IMG/VR virus record: IMGVR_UViG_3300044625_001067
Coordinates: 186,001-250,000 of that record
DNA length: 64,000 nt
Strand: one strand, 5' to 3'
Of this stretch, positions 5,711 through 63,773 are shown one piece after another. The notes below the pieces were generated by a model. The model ran no database searches. It was given only the letters and a program-made list of their open reading frames with translations, and was not told the origin of the DNA. Every line of letters starts with the position of its first letter. The first letter of the stretch is position 1. A program made the translations under genes and the position numbers.

Positions 5711-5798
5711 CTACAGTGACCCCAAAGTTTTAGGACTCGCGGGTCGGATTGCTTCGGCAATCTTTGAAGTCAACTTTACACACAAGGAAACATCTATT

Positions 5799-8700
5799 AT
5801 GATGAATCATAAAGGTTCCACTCAGAGGTGACTCTGATTGAAAATCGGGTGAATTGCTGGGACACCTTAGTTTTGCTTTTGCAAAACAGGCAATCAGCAG
5901 CCAAGGCCCCTAGGGATAGGGGCAAGGTTCAACGACTAGGATAAGTAATCTAGAACAGAAGAAAGTCCCAAGAGCGCCCGACTCTTTGCTCAGGCAAAGA
6001 TGATGATATAGTCTGAACTTTACAGAAATGTAGAGAAGTAAAGGATAAAGAGCCTTTACGATAACAAGTTGCTACAACAGACCTATGCAGGGGTCGATCC
6101 CATTTTTTAGAGTGGCTTTGTTTTAACAAAGAAAATCCGGTGAATTGCTGGGACACCTTAGTTTTGCTTTTGCAAAATAGGCAATCAGCAGCCAAGTTTA
6201 CTTAGGGTCTTTACTAGCTATAGTAGAGTTAGGTAAAAAGGTTCAACGACTAGAAGATGACTGACCCAAGAATAACTCTTCCACGAGCGCCGGGACTCAC
6301 TAGTTACAGACAACTAAACAGATACTTTTTCTTCTTAGAAAAATTCGGTTCCCTCGAAAAGTTTAAATGCTGTCACGAACACCACATCCACCCAACTAAA
6401 ATGGGAGGAAGTGATGCCAAAGTGAACTTAATTTACCTTACACCCAGGGCCCATTACATCGCCCATCAGCTCCTCTTTAGAGCATTTACGGGAAACCAAC
6501 AAGCCCAACGGGCTGCTTGGCTTATGTCCCACACGATTGACGAAGCTTTCGTCAATTCTAGGGTGTATGAGTTTCTAAAAAATAACTACATTTTTTCTGA
6601 AGAGACCCGTAATAAACTTTCTGAAGCAGGTAGGAATAGGAAACTTAGTTTCGAGTCCAGAGAAAAAATCTCTAACTCAAACAAAGAAACCTACAGAAAC
6701 ACCTCTAAAGAAGTTCTACTAGAGAGAATTGAAAGGATGAGGGAGACTAAGAGAGGTACCCCGTGGAATGAGAGTCATAGAAACTCTATCCCCCCTTCTC
6801 TTCCTAGGGGGAGAGATCACTGGAGACTAAAAGATAGTCCATTATGGGGTGTATCCGATGAAATACTCAAAGTATGGCTAGAGAATGGTAAACCATCTTA
6901 TGTTATGCTTTGTAGATTGTTAGGAATCCCCAAAACTAAATCTGTTATGTCTGTAATAAAGAGTATGATATAGTCTGAACTCTTTGGAAACAAGGAGAAG
7001 TAGAGGATAAAGAGCCTTTACGATAACAAATGTCTTACAACCCTTGCACAAGGTTTTATGCTTCCGTCAACAAATATTGCGAATTTTATCGCACCGGTTG
7101 TTGACACTCCTACCAGAGCTGGGAGAATTCTCAGATTTGGGAAGGAACAGTTTGCTATAAACGATTTCCGTCGTGCTTACGGAACTAACATCCCATACGT
7201 CCAAAGCCGCTACGACTCTGAGCCTTATGCTCTAGAGCAGGAAGTGGTCGCCTGGGAATTGCCTGAAGAGGTTGAATCAATAGCCTCCATCAGTTGAGAA
7301 ACTGAAAGAAAAACTGGGTGAATTGCTGGGAAGCCTACGGCTTCAAACGAGAGTTTGAAACTATGGTAATCAGCAGCGAAGCGTTTTCGGGAGAAAACGA
7401 ACGTTCAACGACTAACAGCATACCACTAGAACAGTGATGAAGCTGACAAGAGCGCCTAGCACCCTAACAAGGGTGAAGATATAGTCTGAACTTTCTGGAA
7501 ACAGAAAGAAGTAAAGGATAAAGAGCCTTTACGATAACAGTATTGAATTGAAAACGCTGGCGAGGGTTGTTTGGCTCTTGCTGTGGCAGCTTAACCACAA
7601 ATTAACTGGGTGAATTGCTGGGATCCCTGAATTTCCATTAAAGAAACAGGCAATCAGCAGCCAAGTTTACTACGTCGAGAAGTCACTATGATTTCTGTGG
7701 TGAAAAGGTTCAACGACTAGACGATGAGTTTCGACAACAATAACTCGTCCACGAGCGCCCAGAGCAACATAACGTGCCATTACCGTAACAAATACGAAAA
7801 GTGGTACTGGACTTTAATCAACAAGTTTGAAAATAGAGACTACCTTCCAAAAAAGTTCGAAAATCACCACCCGGTACCAAAAGAGATCTGGCCCAAAGAC
7901 TGGGATAGTCGTGAGATTATAACCACTGTTGGAGTTAGTGTGAGGGAGCACTTCATACTACACCTACTACTAACCAAAGTGGGATTCAGCCACTCTTCCC
8001 TTATCAGATTTCTAAAAGGTTTTCGAAGGGGCCAACAAAGGGGCTTACACGCTACCAACTTAAAAAAGTTGTGGGATCGCTACCAGTTTAAGGGAGACAA
8101 TCTTCCGGATAAACCTTGGGAGCACAGCTACAGGGAAGATTTAAGTTTTCTCGACCTTTGGGTAGACGCTGACTACTTTTATTGGGTGTGGTTGAACATA
8201 CTTCCTACCCCCCTGGGGAAAGGATCCGGCTACCCCGGAAACGGCTATCGAAATCTGTCGAAAGCGGTTGGAGTTAAACCCACAAAGTCGATCAGAAGGA
8301 TGGTAATCTATTTCAAGGCAGGATGGGATCCCTTAAAGGACCCAAGTTGGTTAGATTTCGTTGCTAAGATATAGTCTGAACTTTCTGGAAACAGAAAGAA
8401 GTAAAGGATAAAGAGCCTTTACGATAACAATTTGCCTGCACAAGTAGATCTTCGTGCGATTGAAACAAGGAATGCGATGTCGAGGCTAAACACATTGGCC
8501 CTATGAGCTTAAGCTCATTTAGAAAATTGGGTGAATTGCTGGGAAACCTGACGGTTTCAGGAATGACTTCTCTGAAACACAAGGCAATCAGCAGCCAAGT
8601 TTACTACGTCGAGAAATCGCTATGATTTCTGTGGTGAAAAGGTTCAACGACTAGACGATGAGTTTCGACAACAATAACTCGTCCACGAGCGCCCAACTCT

Positions 8701-9486
8701 TTGCTTAGGCAAAGATGATGATATAGTCTGAGCTTCATGGAAACATGAAGATGTGGGGGATAAAAAGCCTTCACGATAACACAATGAATGAACAGCTACG
8801 AGTACACCGTTGCTCAAGCTGTTTCCGTCACCGCGACTTACAACCCTTACGAGCCCTATAACGGAACCGCAGGTTCCCAGACCGGACTCGGTTTCACAAC
8901 CTGGACAAACTTCAAGACAGCTTACGGCTCCGTTGCTGGAGACGCCGCCTGGTCTGGTGCTACTTCTAACCCAATTGAAGACATCCTAACCCTCAAGCGT
9001 GCAGTCGCCAACCAAATCGGTATCCGTCCAAACTCCGCAGTCGTCGGTACTGCCGTGTTTGACCTCTTGCTGACCAACGAGAAGATCCTTGATCGTATCA
9101 AGTACACATCTGCAGACAGCGTCGACACTGACGTCATTGCTCGCTACTTCGGTCTTGAGCGTGGCCTACGTGTTGCCGAAGGTCGTTACTTAGCGCAAGA
9201 TGGAACCCTACAGCCGGTATTCCCAGCTAACGGTATCCTTCTGTTCTACAGCCCTAACGGTCCTTCTGATTCCATCATGCCTGCTGGTGGTGCGAATGCT
9301 GCGACTCCTGCCTTCTCTTACACATATCAGCTCACAGGCACCCCCGCCGTCCGTCCCGAATACTACATTCGTGAACGTCGCGTTGTGCGTGCTGAAATCA
9401 CAATTGAACGTGTGGTTAACCTGGTTGGCCTCGGCGCAACTGGTCTTATCGGTTCTGGCGCTATGATCACCAACATCCTATCCTGA
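5799..9486 (+). CDS. Major capsid protein, spliced: join(5799-5807,6072-6103,7033-7272,7546-7567,8435-8487,8787-9486), 351 aa
   Basis: Removing five group I introns gives one 1056-nt frame: MMNLQQTYAGVDPILTTLAQGFMLPSTNIANFIAPVVDTPTRAGRILRFGKEQF...LPEEVIENAGEGPAQVDLRAIETRNAMSRLMNSYEY...; VDP.LT.LA.G / FGKE.F pattern of Mu-like capsids; RBS AAGGA upstream. Confidence 0.9.
5808..6071 (+). ncRNA. Group I intron 1 of capsid gene (264 nt, ORF-less)
   Basis: P1 GAAU|...GUUC with U-G; P3 CGGGUG/CGCCCG; GCAATCAGCAG; TTCAACGACTA; GATATAGTC; terminal G 6071. Confidence 0.9.
6104..7032 (+). ncRNA. Group I intron 2 of capsid gene (929 nt, carries HNH ORF)
   Basis: P1 CCAU|...GUGG; P3 CCGGUG/CGCCGG; same core motifs; terminal G 7032. 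Confidence 0.9.
6257..6973 (+). CDS. Intron-encoded HNH homing endonuclease with NUMOD3-like repeats
   Basis: HEHHIHP..MGGSD..NLIYLTPRAHYIAHQLL HNH signature; SEETRNKLSEA / SREKISNS repeats; lies within intron 2. Confidence 0.85.
   Translation: MTDPRITLPRAPGLTSYRQLNRYFFFLEKFGSLEKFKCCHEHHIHPTKMGGSDAKVNLIYLTPRAHYIAHQLLFRAFTGNQQAQRAAWLMSHTIDEAFVNSRVYEFLKNNYIFSEETRNKLSEAGRNRKLSFESREKISNSNKETYRNTSKEVLLERIERMRETKRGTPWNESHRNSIPPSLPRGRDHWRLKDSPLWGVSDEILKVWLENGKPSYVMLCRLLGIPKTKSVMSVIKSMI
7273..7545 (+). ncRNA. Group I intron 3 of capsid gene (273 nt, ORF-less)
   Basis: P1 GAGGU|...GCCUC; P10 UCAAU/AUUGA; P3 CUGGGUG/CGCCUAG; core motifs; terminal G 7545. Confidence 0.9.
7568..8434 (+). ncRNA. Group I intron 4 of capsid gene (867 nt, carries HNH-like ORF)
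   Basis: P1 GAGGGU|...GCUCUU; P3 CUGGGUG/CGCCCAG; core motifs; terminal G 8434. Confidence 0.9.
7724..8374 (+). CDS. Intron-encoded HNH-like homing endonuclease
   Basis: KYEKWYWTLI...ENHHPVPK...VSVREHFILHLLL; C-terminal region resembles that of 6257-6973; within intron 4. Confidence 0.75.
   Translation: MSFDNNNSSTSAQSNITCHYRNKYEKWYWTLINKFENRDYLPKKFENHHPVPKEIWPKDWDSREIITTVGVSVREHFILHLLLTKVGFSHSSLIRFLKGFRRGQQRGLHATNLKKLWDRYQFKGDNLPDKPWEHSYREDLSFLDLWVDADYFYWVWLNILPTPLGKGSGYPGNGYRNLSKAVGVKPTKSIRRMVIYFKAGWDPLKDPSWLDFVAKI
8488..8786 (+). ncRNA. Group I intron 5 of capsid gene (299 nt, ORF-less)
   Basis: P1 GGCU|...GGCC; P10 CAUU/AAUG; P3 UUGGGUG/CGCCCAA; core motifs; terminal G 8786. Confidence 0.9.
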
Positions 9487-9970: not shown

Positions 9971-10016
9971 AAAGCCCCCTAACCGGGGCTTTTTTTTTTT
10001 TTTTTTTTTTTTTTTT
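9971..10016 (+). terminator. Intrinsic terminator with unusually long T-tract
   Basis: AGCCCC-CTAACC-GGGGCT hairpin then about 27 T. Confidence 0.8.
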
Positions 10017-10028
10017 GTGCCTACAAGA

Positions 10029-10036
10029 GGGTAAAA
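10029..10036 (+). promoter_or_regulatory. GGGTAAAR putative late promoter
   Basis: GGGTAAAA right after terminator, upstream of 10065. Confidence 0.6.
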
Positions 10037-10064: not shown

Positions 10065-10541
10065 ATGGCCAAAACTCTGTTTTCAAGTGGCGTTGTCGTA
10101 ACAAGCGAGTGGCTAAATGGTGCAAGGAACATTGTTTTCGACGGCCAAGACCTTGACTGGCACTACGACCCCTTGGGTCTCGACGACCTTGAAAAAACAG
10201 GGCCCACAGGCTTAGACAGCCGCTACGTCACACTAACCACTGAGCAACCCACGTTGTCTGGCACCGGCCTACTTCTGTCGGGTACTCCGGTTTCCGGTTC
10301 AAAAGTTGTCACAGGGTACTGGGGGTTCGGCTTTGACCCTGCTTCAAACCCCACTCTCACTCAGAACTACAACAAGGCCCCGCGAAGTTTTCTAACAAAC
10401 CTTAAGTATAGCAACGCCAACGGCATCAGCCCTTCCTCGGCTAGCCAGAAATTCGCAGCGTTAGCAGACGCAGACTTGGTAACGAAAAAAGTATTGTCCG
10501 ACCAGCTCAACGCTCTTGTGGTGGATAACGGTACATACTGA
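10065..10541 (+). CDS. Hypothetical virion (baseplate/tail) protein
   Basis: ORF heading baseplate operon; GVVVTSEWLN N-terminus resembles tail-associated proteins. Confidence 0.5.
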   Translation: MAKTLFSSGVVVTSEWLNGARNIVFDGQDLDWHYDPLGLDDLEKTGPTGLDSRYVTLTTEQPTLSGTGLLLSGTPVSGSKVVTGYWGFGFDPASNPTLTQNYNKAPRSFLTNLKYSNANGISPSSASQKFAALADADLVTKKVLSDQLNALVVDNGTY

Positions 10542-60819: not shown

Positions 60820-63773
60820 ATGGCAGATCCCTTTTCCGGGGGACTCGGAAGTACGAAACAAGAGATTGGAATACTAACCGAAGCGAAAGAGAGAAACAAG
60901 GCAGCGTCCTTCCGGTCGAAGAAAGACGGAGAGGAAAAACAAGAGAAGAAAAAGAGAGCACCCACAAAAGTGTCCGAGCTTTACAACTCAGGCGTCACTC
61001 TGCTGAAGGCGAAGGGGTTCGTTATTGAGATCGACGAGTCCGGTGACCACTGTAAGCACCGTATTCTGAAGCCCACGCCACCGGTAATGGTAAGGGGAAT
61101 TCAGTACCCGGCAGACTTCAACCCCTTGCAGGATATCTCAGTTTACGACGACTTTGAAAAAGTCGAGTCATGCTTCCATCCTGACTTGTGTCCAGACGAC
61201 GTAAGAACTTTCTGGGAACCTTTATTCAAACCGAAAGCCGGTGACTCAGATCTCGTCTCTTTCACAGAGCGGCTGCTGAAGATGAAGAGAATAAACATGA
61301 GCAAGAGCATTCATGAAACGCTAAGTTACGGCCATACATTTGACCCTGCGGCTCGGTGGGGTGGAGTTCCTGTCTCTAATCCAAGGTCGTGGGTACCAGA
61401 CAGAGACTGGTTCAACCCTGTTCTGCAACTGGTTACCCTAGCTGACGTTTTCTCTATCTTTCCTGAGGCAGAGCGGGAAATGCTCAGGTTGATTATTGGG
61501 CGAATCGGGGTAGGCAGGTCAAATCACTTGCCACCGGGAAAGGACCAGCCTGTAGATCACACTGCTCGTATGGCGGGGGTGATTGTGGGTAAGGATGCTG
61601 GATTAGGAAAGTCGACTCTCTTCAATGGAATGACCGCAGCTTTTTCCAAGTGCGGTTTTGTAACCCACACGTTTAAATCGACTGAGGATCGCTTCGGCCT
61701 TAAAGCTGCTGCTCTTAGTGACATAGCATACAAGGATGATACCTCCTTGGCTTCTCTCAAGAAGTTCCTTGCTTCTGAGGAGACCAAGATTTTGATCACG
61801 AATGGGCTTTTCCAAGTAGAAGAAAAGTTCGAGAAGGCCGAGCAAATTTGGCCAAAGACAGTCATATTGGTTAACTCCAATGACTGGAACAGTAAGTTTG
61901 CCTACGACTTAGATCCGGGGATTGACGCACTAGTCCCCCTGCCCGGTAACGGACAGTAAAAAACGCATTCTAAACGGGGGAACCCCTTGGCGGGTAAAAT
62001 CTGTAAAACAAGGGCAATCCCGTGCTAAGTGGAATTTATCGAATCTTTTGTACGTCAAATGGTAAGTCATACACTGGATCCTCAATAAACATTGACTCTC
62101 GGTGGGGTAAGCACATATACTTACTTCGCAAAGACTGTCATTCTAATGTTCACCTTCAAAACTGCTTCAACAAGTACGGTAGAGAATCTCTAGAGTTCAG
62201 CTTGCTTGAAGACCTTAGCGGTCTACCCCTGGACGAGATCCGGGAGGTTGAGCAGAAATACTTGGACTCCCTGGACTGGAGTGAAGCACTAAACATATGC
62301 AAAGACTCCAGGGGTGGGCAGATAACAGAGGAAGCTAATGAGAGACGAAGGGAGTCTCTAAGGGACTATTACAAAACTAACCCCGATGCTTTGCGGGGGG
62401 GAGAATAATCCCTTCTATGGCAAAAAACACAGTCAAAGTACAAAAGACAGCATATCCAGAGCTAATAGCGGCAAGATGAGGTCAGACGAGTTTAAGAGAC
62501 AGAAATCTGAGTTTATGTCTAACCGCAAGGGCGTACACCATAGCGAAGAACACAAAAGTAAACTAAAGGACAAGTTTACCGGCGGCGGTAATCCTAATGC
62601 CATAGAGACCGTCATCAACGGTGTAGTGTACCCTACAAAACGTGAAGCCCTGAGAGCTTTGGGCCTGAGATATGACTATCAACTTGATAAACACCTAAAA
62701 GCCGAACGACTATCCCGAGAGGGAGTAGAGTCAAGTGACTCGAAACGAATGCCCCCTGTGTAAGCAGGGAGAAGATATAGTCTGCTCTGAATGGTAACAT
62801 TCAGCTGGGTTAGTCCCGGAAAAAGTCTAACGATCTTTTTTGAACATTTGGTATTGATCGCATTAAGCTCATTAGTACATATAGGGAGTATGAGGTAACA
62901 AAAAACATCGAGAACACGAAAGGGACAGTGTCAGAGGGGTCTCCCGACCTTCGCCCACGAGCACACATTCCTTACCTCTCTAATAAGCTAGGTGTGAGTG
63001 CTGATGCGTTGTATCTTTGGTGTCTCCGCCTCGCTACCGATAGGTTCTGGGAAATCATTAACGATGTAGCTGATCCCCGCATCAATCGCCTTCAGGTTGA
63101 AGTGCGCTATTGGACCACACGACAAAGGATCCGATTCAAAGCCGATGTCACACAGGCACTCGTTAATGCCATGGCGTTCGCTCACTCGGTTCGAACGGGG
63201 TCAGACCTTAGCTTCATGCCCGAGCTGACGCCGGATGTTCTCTACGAGTATCTCAGTTCTCTTTACTTTGTGGGAGTGGACCCGTCGTGCCAACACTTAA
63301 CTGCGAGCATGAAAAAAGAGTGGGAGAACGCAGGGCGTCCGTCGACACATTACTACCAAGGTTTCCGAGAGCTAAGGTGGGAATCTGTGAGAAAGGCAAT
63401 TTCCCTCGCACGAGAGTTTCTGTTCGACGAAACGACGGGTCAGCGGCAAGAGACCAAGGACAAAACAGCTCTGACGCTAATTCGAGAGATAATGGAAAAG
63501 CTGGTGATGAGGGATGGTTTTAAGATTGGTGGCGAGGCGAACTACGTCATTGAAAACTGGAACAATTGTCGTCACGCTCAAGAGGAACTTGTTTTGGAAG
63601 GGGAAAAGCTAGTTGAATCCATGGAAGACATGGACAAACAAAGACTACTCAACCCTAAGACAAATTGCTGTGACGATTGGCTTCTTGACAAGAACTACTC
63701 ACCCGATGTTGCTGAAAGGTTCCGAGAATCCGCACGTAAAAAACTCTACGAGGTTAAAGGGGTAAAAGTATGA
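60820..63773 (+). CDS. SF3/D5-like helicase, spliced: join(60820-61922,62852-63773), 674 aa
   Basis: Walker A GKDAGLGKST, Walker B IAYKDD, motif C ILVNSN; splicing restores LDPGIIDRIKLIS (Arg finger region) in frame with ORF 62928-63773. Confidence 0.8.
61992..61999 (+). promoter_or_regulatory. GGGTAAAR motif inside intron upstream of GIY-YIG gene
   Basis: GGGTAAAA in the P5 region, 30 nt before GTG at 62022. Confidence 0.5.
62022..62763 (+). pseudogene. Intron-encoded GIY-YIG homing endonuclease with NUMOD3 repeats, frameshifted at G7 run 62395-62401
   Basis: SGIYRI...YTGSS..I..RW..H; second ORF GENNPFYGKKHS; removing one G fuses both (LRGENNPFYG). Confidence 0.8.

What the first reader, a model, noticed from the sequence alone, without database searches (positions are those of the whole stretch)
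60820..63773. Sixth group I intron, of a different lineage, inserted just before the Arg finger of an SF3-like helicase
Seen: full P1/P3/P4/P7 elements; splicing 61923-62851 joins two separately called ORFs into 674 aa. Core sequences differ from the capsid introns and the ORF (GIY-YIG) lies in P6 rather than P8, indicating independent acquisition. The intron carries the phage's GGGTAAAA motif 30 nt before the nuclease start, paralleling late-promoter control of T4 intron endonucleases.
Basis: partly seen in the sequence, partly recalled or inferred. Interest (0 to 1): 0.6.

Follow-up and report, generated by a model that had tools for sequence, protein, structure and literature searches.

The report
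T4 td-type intron in cyanophage helicase
A 929-base self-splicing-type (group I) intron, a close cousin of the classic phage T4 td intron and carrying a recently broken homing-nuclease gene, interrupts the replicative primase-helicase gene of a 277-kb freshwater cyanophage-like virus; it is a clear but essentially ordinary new member of a well-known kind of mobile element.

Summary
Window 61923-62851 is a 929-nt group I intron splitting a 674-codon primase-helicase gene (exon 1 60820-61922, exon 2 62852-63773). Intron-less homologues are exactly collinear across the junction. Genomes 97-99% identical to the window lack precisely these 929 nt. ORF-less orthologues at the same site pass Rfam's RF00028 threshold (58.9 and 64.7 bits). 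Across 7-8 relatives, 98% of the cells in 70 proposed base pairs are canonical, and 22 pairs show compensatory changes.

The intron belongs to the T4 td lineage, subgroup IA2: P7.1 and P7.2 are joined by GUA, and the 3' core is 77% identical to T-even td introns. It shares only a 39-nt stretch with this genome's capsid introns. Its P6 ORF is an I-TevI-like GIY-YIG/NUMOD3 nuclease.

Relatives and a co-occurring lake population carry in-frame alleles.

GGGTAAAA is a real, strand-specific upstream motif, and it sits in L5 30 nt before the nuclease's GUG start. Its promoter role, in vivo splicing and the 'Arg finger' label remain inferences.

Verdict: new member of a known kind, moderate interest.

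The parts
60820..61922 (+). Exon 1 of the primase-helicase gene (367 codons plus 2 nt of a split Ile codon). It holds Walker A (GKDAGLGKST), Walker B (YKDDTS) and motif C (LVNSN).
   Evidence: PHROG 25243 positions 9-340, E 2.9e-74. Pfam DUF5906 at residues 256-355. 56% identical to S-CBWM1 gp136.
61917..61938 (+). P1: exon GGGGAU (61917-61922) pairs with the internal guide GUCCCC (61933-61938), with a U.G wobble at the 5' splice site (U61922.G61933).
   Evidence: Read from the sequence. All 6 pairs are canonical in 7 sequences, including T4 td, whose guide sequence differs to match its own exon.
61923..62851 (+). The group I intron, 929 nt, subgroup IA2, T4 td lineage. It ends in omega-G at 62851.
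61939..61956 (+). P2 hairpin, a 7-bp stem with a GUAA tetraloop.
   Evidence: 5 of 7 pairs show compensatory changes.
61965..61970 (+). P3 5' strand (GCAUUC), which pairs with 62747-62752 (GAAUGC) across the ORF.
   Evidence: 3 of 6 pairs show double compensatory changes among win, L143, L151-156 and td.
61974..62023 (+). P4-P5 domain: P4 61974-61979/62018-62023, P5 61984-61989/62009-62014, and a 19-nt L5 at 61990-62008.
   Evidence: RF00028 partial match at 61974-62067. P4 is invariant and shared with T4 td. MFE folding of the 5' region reproduces P1, P2, P4 and P5.
61992..61999 (+). GGGTAAAA motif in L5, 30 nt before the nuclease start. It is a putative internal (class-specific, possibly late) promoter element.
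   Evidence: 14 copies in the window, all on the + strand, against 3.2 expected. The whole genome has 30 on + and 6 on -, with 14 of the 30 lying 25-34 nt before an ORF start. The motif occurs only in GIY-YIG-bearing versions of this intron: win and L153, with GGCAAAA in L143. It is absent from the ORF-less and HNH versions.
62022..62408 (+). Nuclease ORF part 1, the GIY-YIG catalytic domain (128 codons). The GUG start straddles P4 3' and P6 5'.
   Evidence: Pfam GIY-YIG, E 1.8e-8. 41% identical to I-TevI residues 1-83, E 7e-16, with Y6, Y17, R27, H31, H40 and E75 equivalents kept.
62395..62401 (+). G7 run holding a 1-nt insertion, which causes a +1 frameshift in the nuclease gene.
   Evidence: L143, L153 and L005 have one base fewer here. 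The same G7 is present in L119 and in DNA run X2. DNA run X6 and RNA runs X11 and X12 carry G>A at 62396 plus a 1-nt deletion at 62397, which restores the frame.
62386..62763 (+). Nuclease ORF part 2 in the +1 frame: NUMOD3 repeats and the DNA-binding region. It reads on through P7, P7.1, P7.2 and P3' to a stop in the P8 loop (62761-62763).
   Evidence: Pfam NUMOD3, E 7.4e-11. phrog_314 positions 282-368 follow part 1's positions 179-278. T4, L151 and L153 have TAA where this intron has GAA at 62704-62706.
62701..62782 (+). 3' catalytic core: P6 3' 62701-62702; P7 5' 62708-62712; P7.1 62713-62724; GUA linker 62725-62727; P7.2 62728-62741; P3 3' 62747-62752; P8 62754-62769; J8/7 62770-62777; P7 3' 62778-62782.
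   Evidence: RF00028 match of 29.8 bits at 62642-62804. 77% identical to the T-even td intron over about 155 nt. Covariation is seen in P7.2, P8 and P3.
62787..62851 (+). Peripheral 3' helices and the 3' splice site: P9 62787-62804 (GUAA loop), P9.1 62805-62819, P9.2 62820-62840, and the tail UGAACAUUUGG.
   Evidence: Compensatory changes in P9, P9.1 and P9.2. Alignment with near-identical intron-less genomes resumes at 62853.
62852..63773 (+). Exon 2 of the primase-helicase gene. It starts with the last base of the split Ile codon, followed by I-D-R-I-K (the invariant R, a putative Arg finger).
   Evidence: PHROG 25243 positions 342-608, E 1.5e-43. LDPGIIDRIK is invariant in 9 intron-less homologues down to 62% identity.

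Best explanation
Window 61923-62851 is a mobile group I intron of subgroup IA2. It is homologous to the phage T4 td intron and sits in the primase-helicase gene of a 277-kb freshwater phage related to Synechococcus phage S-CBWM1.

Inferred mechanism. The gene is transcribed through the intron. The RNA folds into the ribozyme, with P1 formed by exon GGGGAU and the guide GUCCCC, P3-P8 and P4-P6 domains, and P7.1/P7.2. It then excises itself by the standard guanosine-initiated two-step transesterification, joining ...GAUCCGGGGAU to UAUUGAUCGC and restoring the invariant LDPGI-IDRIK block.

The P6 loop carries an I-TevI-like GIY-YIG/NUMOD3 homing endonuclease gene. When intact, as in relatives L143 and L153 and in a co-occurring lake population, it would cut intron-less alleles and drive copying of the intron into them. 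This fits the cluster of synonymous differences at the junction. In this genome the nuclease gene is inactivated by a 1-nt insertion in a G7 run, so the intron here is probably a splicing-competent passenger that has just lost its own mobility function.

The GGGTAAAA element in L5 is probably a phage-class promoter element. A transcript started there would lack the 5' strands of P4 and P5. That would free the SD-like AAGGG while making a transcript that cannot fold as a ribozyme, which is analogous to late-promoter control of I-TevI.

Shown: the anatomy, homology, covariation, presence/absence polymorphism and frameshift. Inferred: splicing in vivo, the homing activity and the promoter function.
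For: Collinearity: PHROG 25243 matches exon 1 at 9-340 and exon 2 at 342-608. In uninterrupted genes of three cyanophage lineages the two exon matches lie 1-2 codons apart. At least 120 full-length protein clusters cover residues 215-470 without interruption.

Precise indel: L120 and L140 are 96.9% identical up to 61922 and 98.8% identical from 62853, and lack exactly the 929 nt. Both alleles occur in the same lake metagenomes.

Ribozyme: ORF-less orthologues at the same site score 64.7 and 58.9 bits against RF00028, above the gathering score of 50. The window copy gives partial hits of 29.8 and 12.3 bits. The bona fide T-even td intron scores only 40 bits, and the U5 td intron with a full ORF scores nothing. 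Of the cells in 70 pairs, 98.1% are canonical, and 22 pairs show compensatory changes, including the long-range P3.

Lineage: the 3' core is 77% identical to the td intron. P7.1 and P7.2 joined by GUA is the IA2 criterion quoted in PMC3428280.

Nuclease: GIY-YIG plus NUMOD3 and 41% identity to I-TevI. The frameshift is shown, and in-frame alleles.

Motif. The motif co-occurs with the GIY-YIG cassette. The SD-like AAGGG has unpaired probability 0.0 in the pre-mRNA context and 0.5-0.6 in a transcript started in L5. The T4 precedent is described in PMC2988022.
Against: No spliced RNA of this allele was observed. The only exon-exon joint in the RNA run (61907->62856) carries the 19 nt of the intron-less DNA allele and is also present in DNA runs. 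One RNA-library contig (61951-62914) spans the 3' splice site unspliced. Only contigs were available, not raw reads.

Rfam does not reach its gathering score on the window copy itself. P10 is only about 2 bp.

The unpaired probability of the GUG start itself hardly changes between the two transcript contexts (0.33 against 0.29-0.30). There is no operator-like similarity between the L5 region and the homing site. The motif's promoter role is untested.
Confidence: 0.9

Rival explanations
1. The element is a decayed, non-splicing insertion, and the helicase is made as two separate polypeptides or not at all. On this reading it is a split gene or pseudogene rather than a spliced gene.
For: No spliced RNA was seen. 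The window copy is below Rfam's gathering score. The nuclease gene is already broken.
Against: Every core helix is intact and 98% canonical, with compensatory changes. The intron splits a codon inside an invariant block, and exon 2 has no start codon at its beginning. The same intron is kept at this site across hosts from 63% to 100% protein identity. The low Rfam score is explained by the 700-nt ORF, because genuine td introns with an ORF also fail.
Confidence: 0.04
2. The nuclease is still made in this genome. The G7 run would be read through by transcriptional slippage or a programmed frameshift, or the extra G would be an assembly error, so the intron would still be actively mobile.
For: Homopolymer G7 runs are slippery. 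All catalytic residues of the GIY-YIG domain are kept. Both halves remain open to their ends.
Against: The same G7 appears in three independent assemblies: the window, L119 and run X2. Intact relatives have non-homopolymeric sequence here (GC-TTGGAGAG, GTGGGG, CGAGGGG), so the run looks like a fresh mutation and not a conserved recoding site.
Confidence: 0.1
3. GGGTAAAA in L5 is not a promoter for the nuclease. It would be a structural loop element of the ribozyme, or a chance copy of a motif whose role elsewhere is translational or terminator-related.
For: No transcription start data exist. L143 has GGCAAAA in its place. Some genomic copies lie only 8-14 nt from a start codon. The capsid-intron ORF has no such motif.
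Against: The motif is strand-specific and four-fold enriched. Its modal spacing of 29-31 nt to start codons is matched exactly here. The L5 expansion that carries it is present only when the GIY-YIG ORF is present, and is absent from otherwise near-identical ORF-less and HNH versions (L153 against L154 and L151).
Confidence: 0.3

Closest known systems
Phage T4 / T-even td group I intron (subgroup IA2) with I-TevI
   Same: The P4 and J3/4 core (CUAAACGGGG...CAAUCCCGUGCUAA) is the same, and the P7-P7.1-GUA-P7.2 block is nearly identical, with 77% identity over about 155 nt of the 3' core. The ORF sits in the P6 loop. The nuclease is a GIY-YIG enzyme 41% identical to I-TevI, with a matching GENNxF..KHS NUMOD3 segment. 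ORF-deleted derivatives exist in both systems: e11/2 td and L154.
   Different: The host gene is a primase-helicase, not thymidylate synthase, and the guide sequence differs accordingly. The host phage is a freshwater cyanophage-like jumbo phage. The nuclease lacks the I-TevI zinc finger. Its GUG start lies inside P4/P6, not about 55 nt into P6. The T4-position stop codon (TAA) is GAA here, so the ORF runs through P7 and P3' to the P8 loop. L5 is expanded and carries the phage's own GGGTAAAA motif in place of a T4 late promoter. No operator-like copy of the homing site was found. The nuclease gene is frameshifted.
[quoted passage not shown]
   Same: It is an IA2 intron (P7.1/P7.2 joined by GUA) in a replication gene of a freshwater cyanophage. 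Its ORF starts in P6a and extends over P7.
   Different: The gene, the phage type (T7-like) and the nuclease family (HNH) all differ. Splicing and nicking were shown experimentally there and not here. Relatives L151 and L152 of the present intron do carry an HNH_3 ORF.
The five to six group I introns in the capsid region of the same genome (window 5794-8750)
   Same: They are RF00028 group I introns with the shared J8/7-P7 consensus GAAGAUAUAGUCU and an insertion between P7 and P3'.
   Different: The P4-P6 sequence differs (AAUUGCUGGGAA... against UAAACGGGGGAA...). Only a 39-nt BLAST match to the helicase intron was found. Their ORF lies in P8 and is not a GIY-YIG gene. No GGGTAAAA precedes it.

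Membership tests
Group I intron (Rfam RF00028) | P1 with a U.G wobble at the 5' splice site, formed with an internal guide sequence | tested here: met
   U61922.G61933. GGGGAU pairs with GUCCCC, and all 6 pairs are canonical in 7 sequences.
Group I intron (Rfam RF00028) | The intron ends in a G (omega-G), and the exons join in frame | tested here: met
   G62851. Only this boundary keeps the frame open, and homologues are collinear to the codon.
Group I intron (Rfam RF00028) | Conserved core helices P3-P8 and P4-P6, with the P3/P7 pseudoknot supported by covariation | tested here: met
   70 pairs, 98.1% canonical cells, 22 pairs with compensatory changes; P3 covaries across about 780 nt.
Group I intron (Rfam RF00028) | Score at or above Rfam's gathering threshold (50 bits) | tested here: inconclusive
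   The window copy gives split hits of 29.8 and 12.3 bits. ORF-less orthologues at the same site score 64.7 and 58.9 bits. The genuine td intron scores 40 bits, or nothing when it carries a full ORF.
Group I intron (Rfam RF00028) | Self-splicing, or splicing in vivo | not testable with these tools
   Only contigs of the RNA runs were available. No spliced junction of this allele was seen.
Subgroup IA2 / T4 td lineage | P7.1 and P7.2 between P7 and P3', linked by G-U-A (the criterion quoted in PMC3428280) | tested here: met
   UCCC-GAGA-GGGA, then GUA, then GAGUC-AAGU-GACUC at 62713-62741.
Subgroup IA2 / T4 td lineage | Nucleotide-level homology to the td intron core | tested here: met
   Megablast gives 76-77% identity over 152-155 nt to the U5 and e11/2 td introns, E 6e-15. 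The P4 and J3/4 strings are shared.
GIY-YIG homing endonuclease (I-TevI family) | GIY-YIG catalytic domain with the conserved Tyr, Arg and Glu residues | tested here: met
   Pfam PF01541, E 1.8e-8. Aligned to I-TevI, the Y6, Y17, R27 and E75 equivalents are present.
GIY-YIG homing endonuclease (I-TevI family) | A single intact ORF joining the catalytic and DNA-binding domains | tested here: not met
   A +1 frameshift at the G7 run 62395-62401 splits the ORF. The ORF is intact in L143, L153 and the population of runs X6, X11 and X12.
GIY-YIG homing endonuclease (I-TevI family) | Site-specific cleavage of the intron-less allele | not testable with these tools
   Indirect evidence only: presence/absence polymorphism, and 9 synonymous differences within +/-50 nt of the junction against 0-2 per 50 nt in the adjacent sequence.
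SF3 (D5/NrS-1-type, DUF5906) helicase | Walker A, Walker B and motif C within a DUF5906 domain | tested here: met
   PF19263 scores 28.4 bits (cut-off 27.6) at residues 256-355. Atlas neighbours are DUF5906 clusters that also carry Pox_D5, RNA_helicase or Parvo_NS1. DUF5906 is the SF3 AAA+ helicase domain of D5 and NrS-1 (PMC9611036).
SF3 (D5/NrS-1-type, DUF5906) helicase | Arginine finger shortly after motif C, here R371, the third residue after the junction | tested here: inconclusive
   R371 is invariant in 9 homologues and lies 17 residues after N354. There was no PDB sequence hit, and the AlphaFold model was unusable at pLDDT 37.6.

The most novel reading that the evidence does not exclude
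The nuclease cassette and the ribozyme are wired as a mutually exclusive switch. The cassette brings its own phage-class promoter inside L5, and its SD-like sequence and GUG start are the 3' strands of P5 and P4. Read-through pre-mRNA would therefore fold and splice with the nuclease start region paired. Transcripts started in L5 could not form the ribozyme and would instead translate the nuclease. The promoter-plus-ORF unit (L5 to P6) would move between otherwise identical introns as one module, as suggested by comparing L153 with L154 and L151.
Probability: 0.3. Interest if true: 0.5.

Novelty: new member of a known kind. Interest (0 to 1): 0.4.

Why it matters
It extends the T4 td/I-TevI intron lineage to the replicative helicase of freshwater cyanophage-like jumbo phages. 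Natural lake populations here show every stage of the homing cycle at a single site: an empty site, an intact nuclease, a just-frameshifted nuclease, a nuclease swapped for an HNH gene, a deletion remnant, and an ORF-less intron. For annotation, the two 'hypothetical' ORFs 60820-61959 and 62928-63773 are one essential gene. For biology, the helicase gene of this phage group is an intron hot spot, with up to four td-like introns. The promoter-in-L5 and start-codon-in-P4 layout is a testable variant of the T4 strategy for keeping nuclease expression from interfering with splicing.

Tried and rejected
- **Rfam on the window copy:** the gathering-threshold search finds nothing at this site. This was rejected as evidence against an intron, because genuine td introns with an ORF also fail.
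- **Spliced RNA:** the one read-laying run showed a joint 61907->62856 in RNA run X12, but its 19 intervening letters are those of the intron-less DNA allele, and it is also present in DNA runs. It was therefore rejected as evidence of splicing.
- **Autorepressor operator:** an I-TevI-style operator (a copy of the homing site overlapping the internal promoter) was looked for and not found. The best local alignment was no better than shuffles.
- **Arg finger by structure:** phmmer and a profile search against PDB gave no relevant hit, NCBIfam gave none, and AlphaFold2 on the helicase domain of the intron-less relative L120 with 14 sequences gave pLDDT 37.6, which is unusable. No fold search was run.
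- **Start-codon sequestration:** thermodynamic folding supports release of the SD-like AAGGG in an L5-initiated transcript, but not of the GUG itself.
- **Joined exons:** the spliced (joined-exon) protein was never built or searched. All searches were run exon by exon by reference, or on natural intron-less homologues.
- none occurred.
Full report
**Setting.** The window is bases 186001-250000 of a 277,244-bp IMG/VR virus record that is estimated to be 98% complete. Public runs holding this stretch are lake-water and freshwater metagenomes. The closest named relative of the interrupted gene is gp136, annotated 'putative DNA primase', of Synechococcus phage S-CBWM1, at 56% identity.

**Observation check.** Two + strand ORFs, 60820-61959 and 62928-63773, flank a stretch holding two shorter ORFs, 62022-62408 and 62386-62763.
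- Exon 1 ends ...GATCCGGGGAT at 61922, the proposed intron ends in G at 62851, and exon 2 begins TATTGATCGC.
- The frame stays open from 62853 into the downstream ORF, and the two exons add up to 674 codons.
- I never built or searched the joined product.
- PHROG 25243 ('DNA primase', 610 positions) matches exon 1 at positions 9-340 and exon 2 at positions 342-608. This is perfect collinearity apart from the split codon.
- In tblastn against uninterrupted genes of S-CBWM1, S-TIM5 and Acaryochloris phage A-HIS1, the exon 1 and exon 2 matches lie exactly one or two codons apart.
- A word search with an intron-less relative returned at least 120 full-length clusters (about 660 aa) that cover residues 215-470 without interruption.

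**Comparative proof of a precise insertion.** Of 39 related helicase loci in IMG/VR, 30 have an empty site.
- L120 and L140 are 96.9% identical to the window over 5.1 kb ending exactly at 61922, and 98.8% identical from 62853 onwards. They lack precisely the 929 nt.
- The site is occupied in L119 (an independent assembly with an identical 929 nt), L143, L151-L156 and the partial L005.
- Contigs from single lake metagenomes (X2, X6) hold both the intron-plus junctions and an intron-less joint.
- Against L120 and L140, differences cluster at the junction. There are 9 differences, all synonymous, within +/-50 nt, against 0-2 per 50 nt in the neighbouring several hundred nt.
- Intron-plus alleles from hosts as diverged as 63% protein identity share the flank GAUCCGGGGAU|UAUUGA. 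This is the pattern expected from homing with short co-conversion, or from selection for P1 pairing.

**Is it a ribozyme?**
- Rfam's gathering search finds only the capsid-region introns.
- A permissive search finds the P4-P6 part at 61974-62067 (12.3 bits) and the P7-P9 part at 62642-62804 (29.8 bits, E 2.5e-5).
- This shortfall is uninformative. The bona fide T-even td intron with a truncated ORF scores 40 bits, and the U5 td intron with its full ORF is not detected at all.
- ORF-less orthologues at the same site score 64.7 bits (L154) and 58.9 bits (L156), above the 50-bit threshold.
- I placed P1, P2, P3, P4, P5, P6, P7, P7.1, P7.2, P8, P9, P9.1 and P9.2 on the sequence (coordinates are in 'parts').
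- I then tested them on a MAFFT alignment of the same-site introns plus the td intron. Across 70 pairs, 98.1% of 522 cells are canonical. 22 pairs show double compensatory changes, three of them in P3, whose strands lie about 780 nt apart across the ORF.
- Thermodynamic folding of the 5' region alone reproduces P1, P2, P4 and P5.

**Lineage.**
- Megablast finds 76-77% identity over about 155 nt between 62693-62847 and the td introns of phages U5 and e11/2.
- The P4 and J3/4 strings and the P7-P7.1-GUA-P7.2 block are nearly identical to T4 td.
- P7.1 and P7.2 linked by G-U-A is the criterion for subgroup IA2 quoted in PMC3428280.
- By contrast, the only similarity to this genome's capsid introns is a 39-nt J8/7-P7-P9 stretch. 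Their P4 sequence differs, and the ORF-bearing capsid intron has its roughly 590-nt insert in P8.
- The td-type P4-P5-P4' signature occurs in more than 113 IMG/VR contigs: 21 in td genes, 5 in this helicase and 87 elsewhere. Their sizes are bimodal, ORF-less against ORF in P6. The lineage is therefore widespread, which limits novelty.
- Relatives carry related td-like introns at three further sites of the same gene, after residues about 261, 303 and 330. L156 has all four sites occupied.

**The nuclease.**
- ORF 62022-62408 is a GIY-YIG domain (Pfam E 1.8e-8). It is 41% identical to I-TevI residues 1-83, with the catalytic Tyr, Arg, His and Glu positions kept.
- ORF 62386-62763, in the +1 frame, carries NUMOD3 repeats and matches the I-TevI GENNxF..KHS segment.
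- The two pieces are collinear on phrog_314, at 179-278 and then 282-368.
- Alignment with L143, L153 and L005 shows exactly one extra base in the window's G7 run at 62395-62401.
- L143 and L153 encode single intact ORFs of 246 and 227 aa.
- The same G7 is present in L119 and in DNA run X2. DNA run X6 and RNA-library runs X11 and X12, from another study, carry G>A at 62396 plus a 1-nt deletion, which restores ...LRGENNPFYG....
- The frameshift is therefore a real, recent allele and not an assembly slip.

**Stages of the homing cycle at this one site.**
- L151 and L152 have an HNH_3 ORF in place of the GIY-YIG gene.
- L154 and L155 keep only a deletion remnant (MLNGIYSI|GLKYSYQLDK...).
- L156 has no ORF.
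- The T4-position stop codon (GCC UAA CGACUA), retained in L151 and L153, is GAA in the window, L143, L154, L156 and L005. The ORF there reads on through P7, P7.1, P7.2 and P3' into P8.

**The motif.**
- GGGTAAAA occurs 14 times in the window, all on the + strand, against 3.2 expected; none of 100 shuffles reached 14.
- In the whole record it occurs 30 times on the + strand and 6 on the - strand. 28 of the 30 lie in the 167-276 kb part, and 14 lie 25-34 nt before an ORF start, with a mode of 29-31 nt.
- The intron copy (61992-61999) lies in an expanded L5, 30 nt before GUG 62022.
- The expanded L5 with the motif is present in the GIY-YIG-bearing versions: the window and L153, with GGCAAAA in L143. 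It is replaced by a short loop in the otherwise near-identical ORF-less and HNH versions.
- This links the motif to nuclease expression. Its identity as a promoter, and as a 'late' one, is inference by analogy with T4 (PMC2988022).
- The SD-like AAGGG is the 3' strand of P5, and GUG straddles P4 and P6. The computed unpaired probability of AAGGG rises from 0.0 in the pre-mRNA context to 0.5-0.6 in a transcript starting in L5. That of GUG does not change.
- No I-TevI-like operator was found.

**The host protein.**
- Pfam DUF5906 matches residues 256-355, from Walker A to motif C.
- DUF5906 is the SF3 AAA+ helicase domain of vaccinia D5 and NrS-1 (PMC9611036).
- Atlas neighbours are DUF5906 clusters that also carry Pox_D5, RNA_helicase or Parvo_NS1.
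- The junction falls inside the invariant block LDPGI|IDRIK. R371 lies 17 residues after motif C N354. From my own knowledge of E1, large T antigen and D5, that is where SF3 arginine fingers lie.
- PDB sequence searches found nothing relevant, and the AlphaFold model was unusable. 'Arg finger' therefore stays an inference.

**What was not shown.** Splicing was not observed. The only exon-exon joint in an RNA library belongs to the intron-less DNA allele, and one RNA-library contig crosses the 3' splice site unspliced. Contigs cannot show rare spliced forms.

**Verdict.** This is a genuine td-type IA2 group I intron with a freshly frameshifted I-TevI-like nuclease gene, precisely inserted in a conserved helicase motif. 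It is a new member of a known kind. The population-level snapshot and the promoter and start-codon layout are the most interesting aspects.

Noticed in passing
window 6793-6997: Candidate additional group I intron (RF00028 32.8 bits, below the gathering score), just upstream of the major-capsid exon that starts near 7031. S-CBWM1 gp175 maps to 7031-7273, 8435-8494 and 8794-9483. The window may therefore hold seven introns, not six.
   Followed up: partly
L156:4001-7586 (also L143, L150-L155, L121-L123, L149): In relatives the same helicase gene carries introns at up to four sites, after residues about 261, 303, 330 and 367. L156 has all four sites occupied. Several have td-like 3' cores 65-78% identical to the window's intron.
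   Followed up: partly
L151:5716-6517 (same as L152): The same intron at the same site carries a 169-aa HNH_3 endonuclease ORF in place of the GIY-YIG gene. This is a nuclease swap within one intron lineage.
   Followed up: yes
whole record G000 (window motif sites 1277 ... 63760): GGGTAAAA occurs 30 times on the + strand and 6 on the - strand in 277 kb. 28 of the 30 lie in G000 167.6-276 kb, typically 29-31 nt before a start codon. This looks like a class-specific upstream element for one half of the genome.
   Followed up: partly
window about 10000-10028: A run of at least 23 T lies immediately upstream of the GGGTAAAA at 10029 and the ORF starting at 10065 (row 196029). Its function is unknown.
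   Followed up: no
window 7724-8371: The 216-aa ORF inside P8 of the capsid intron 7540-8398 has no Pfam match at E<=0.01 and no GGGTAAAA upstream.
   Followed up: partly
window 61900-62860 in runs X2 and X6: Contig depth over the intron (26-34) is about half that over the exons (55-60), and the intron-less joint has depth 28-34. Intron-plus and intron-minus phages appear to coexist at similar abundance in the same lake samples. These are contig-level depths only.
   Followed up: partly
L143:4784-5722: The site-261 intron of L143 also carries GGGTAAAA, here overlapping the ATG of a 273-aa ORF that has no Pfam hit.
   Followed up: no
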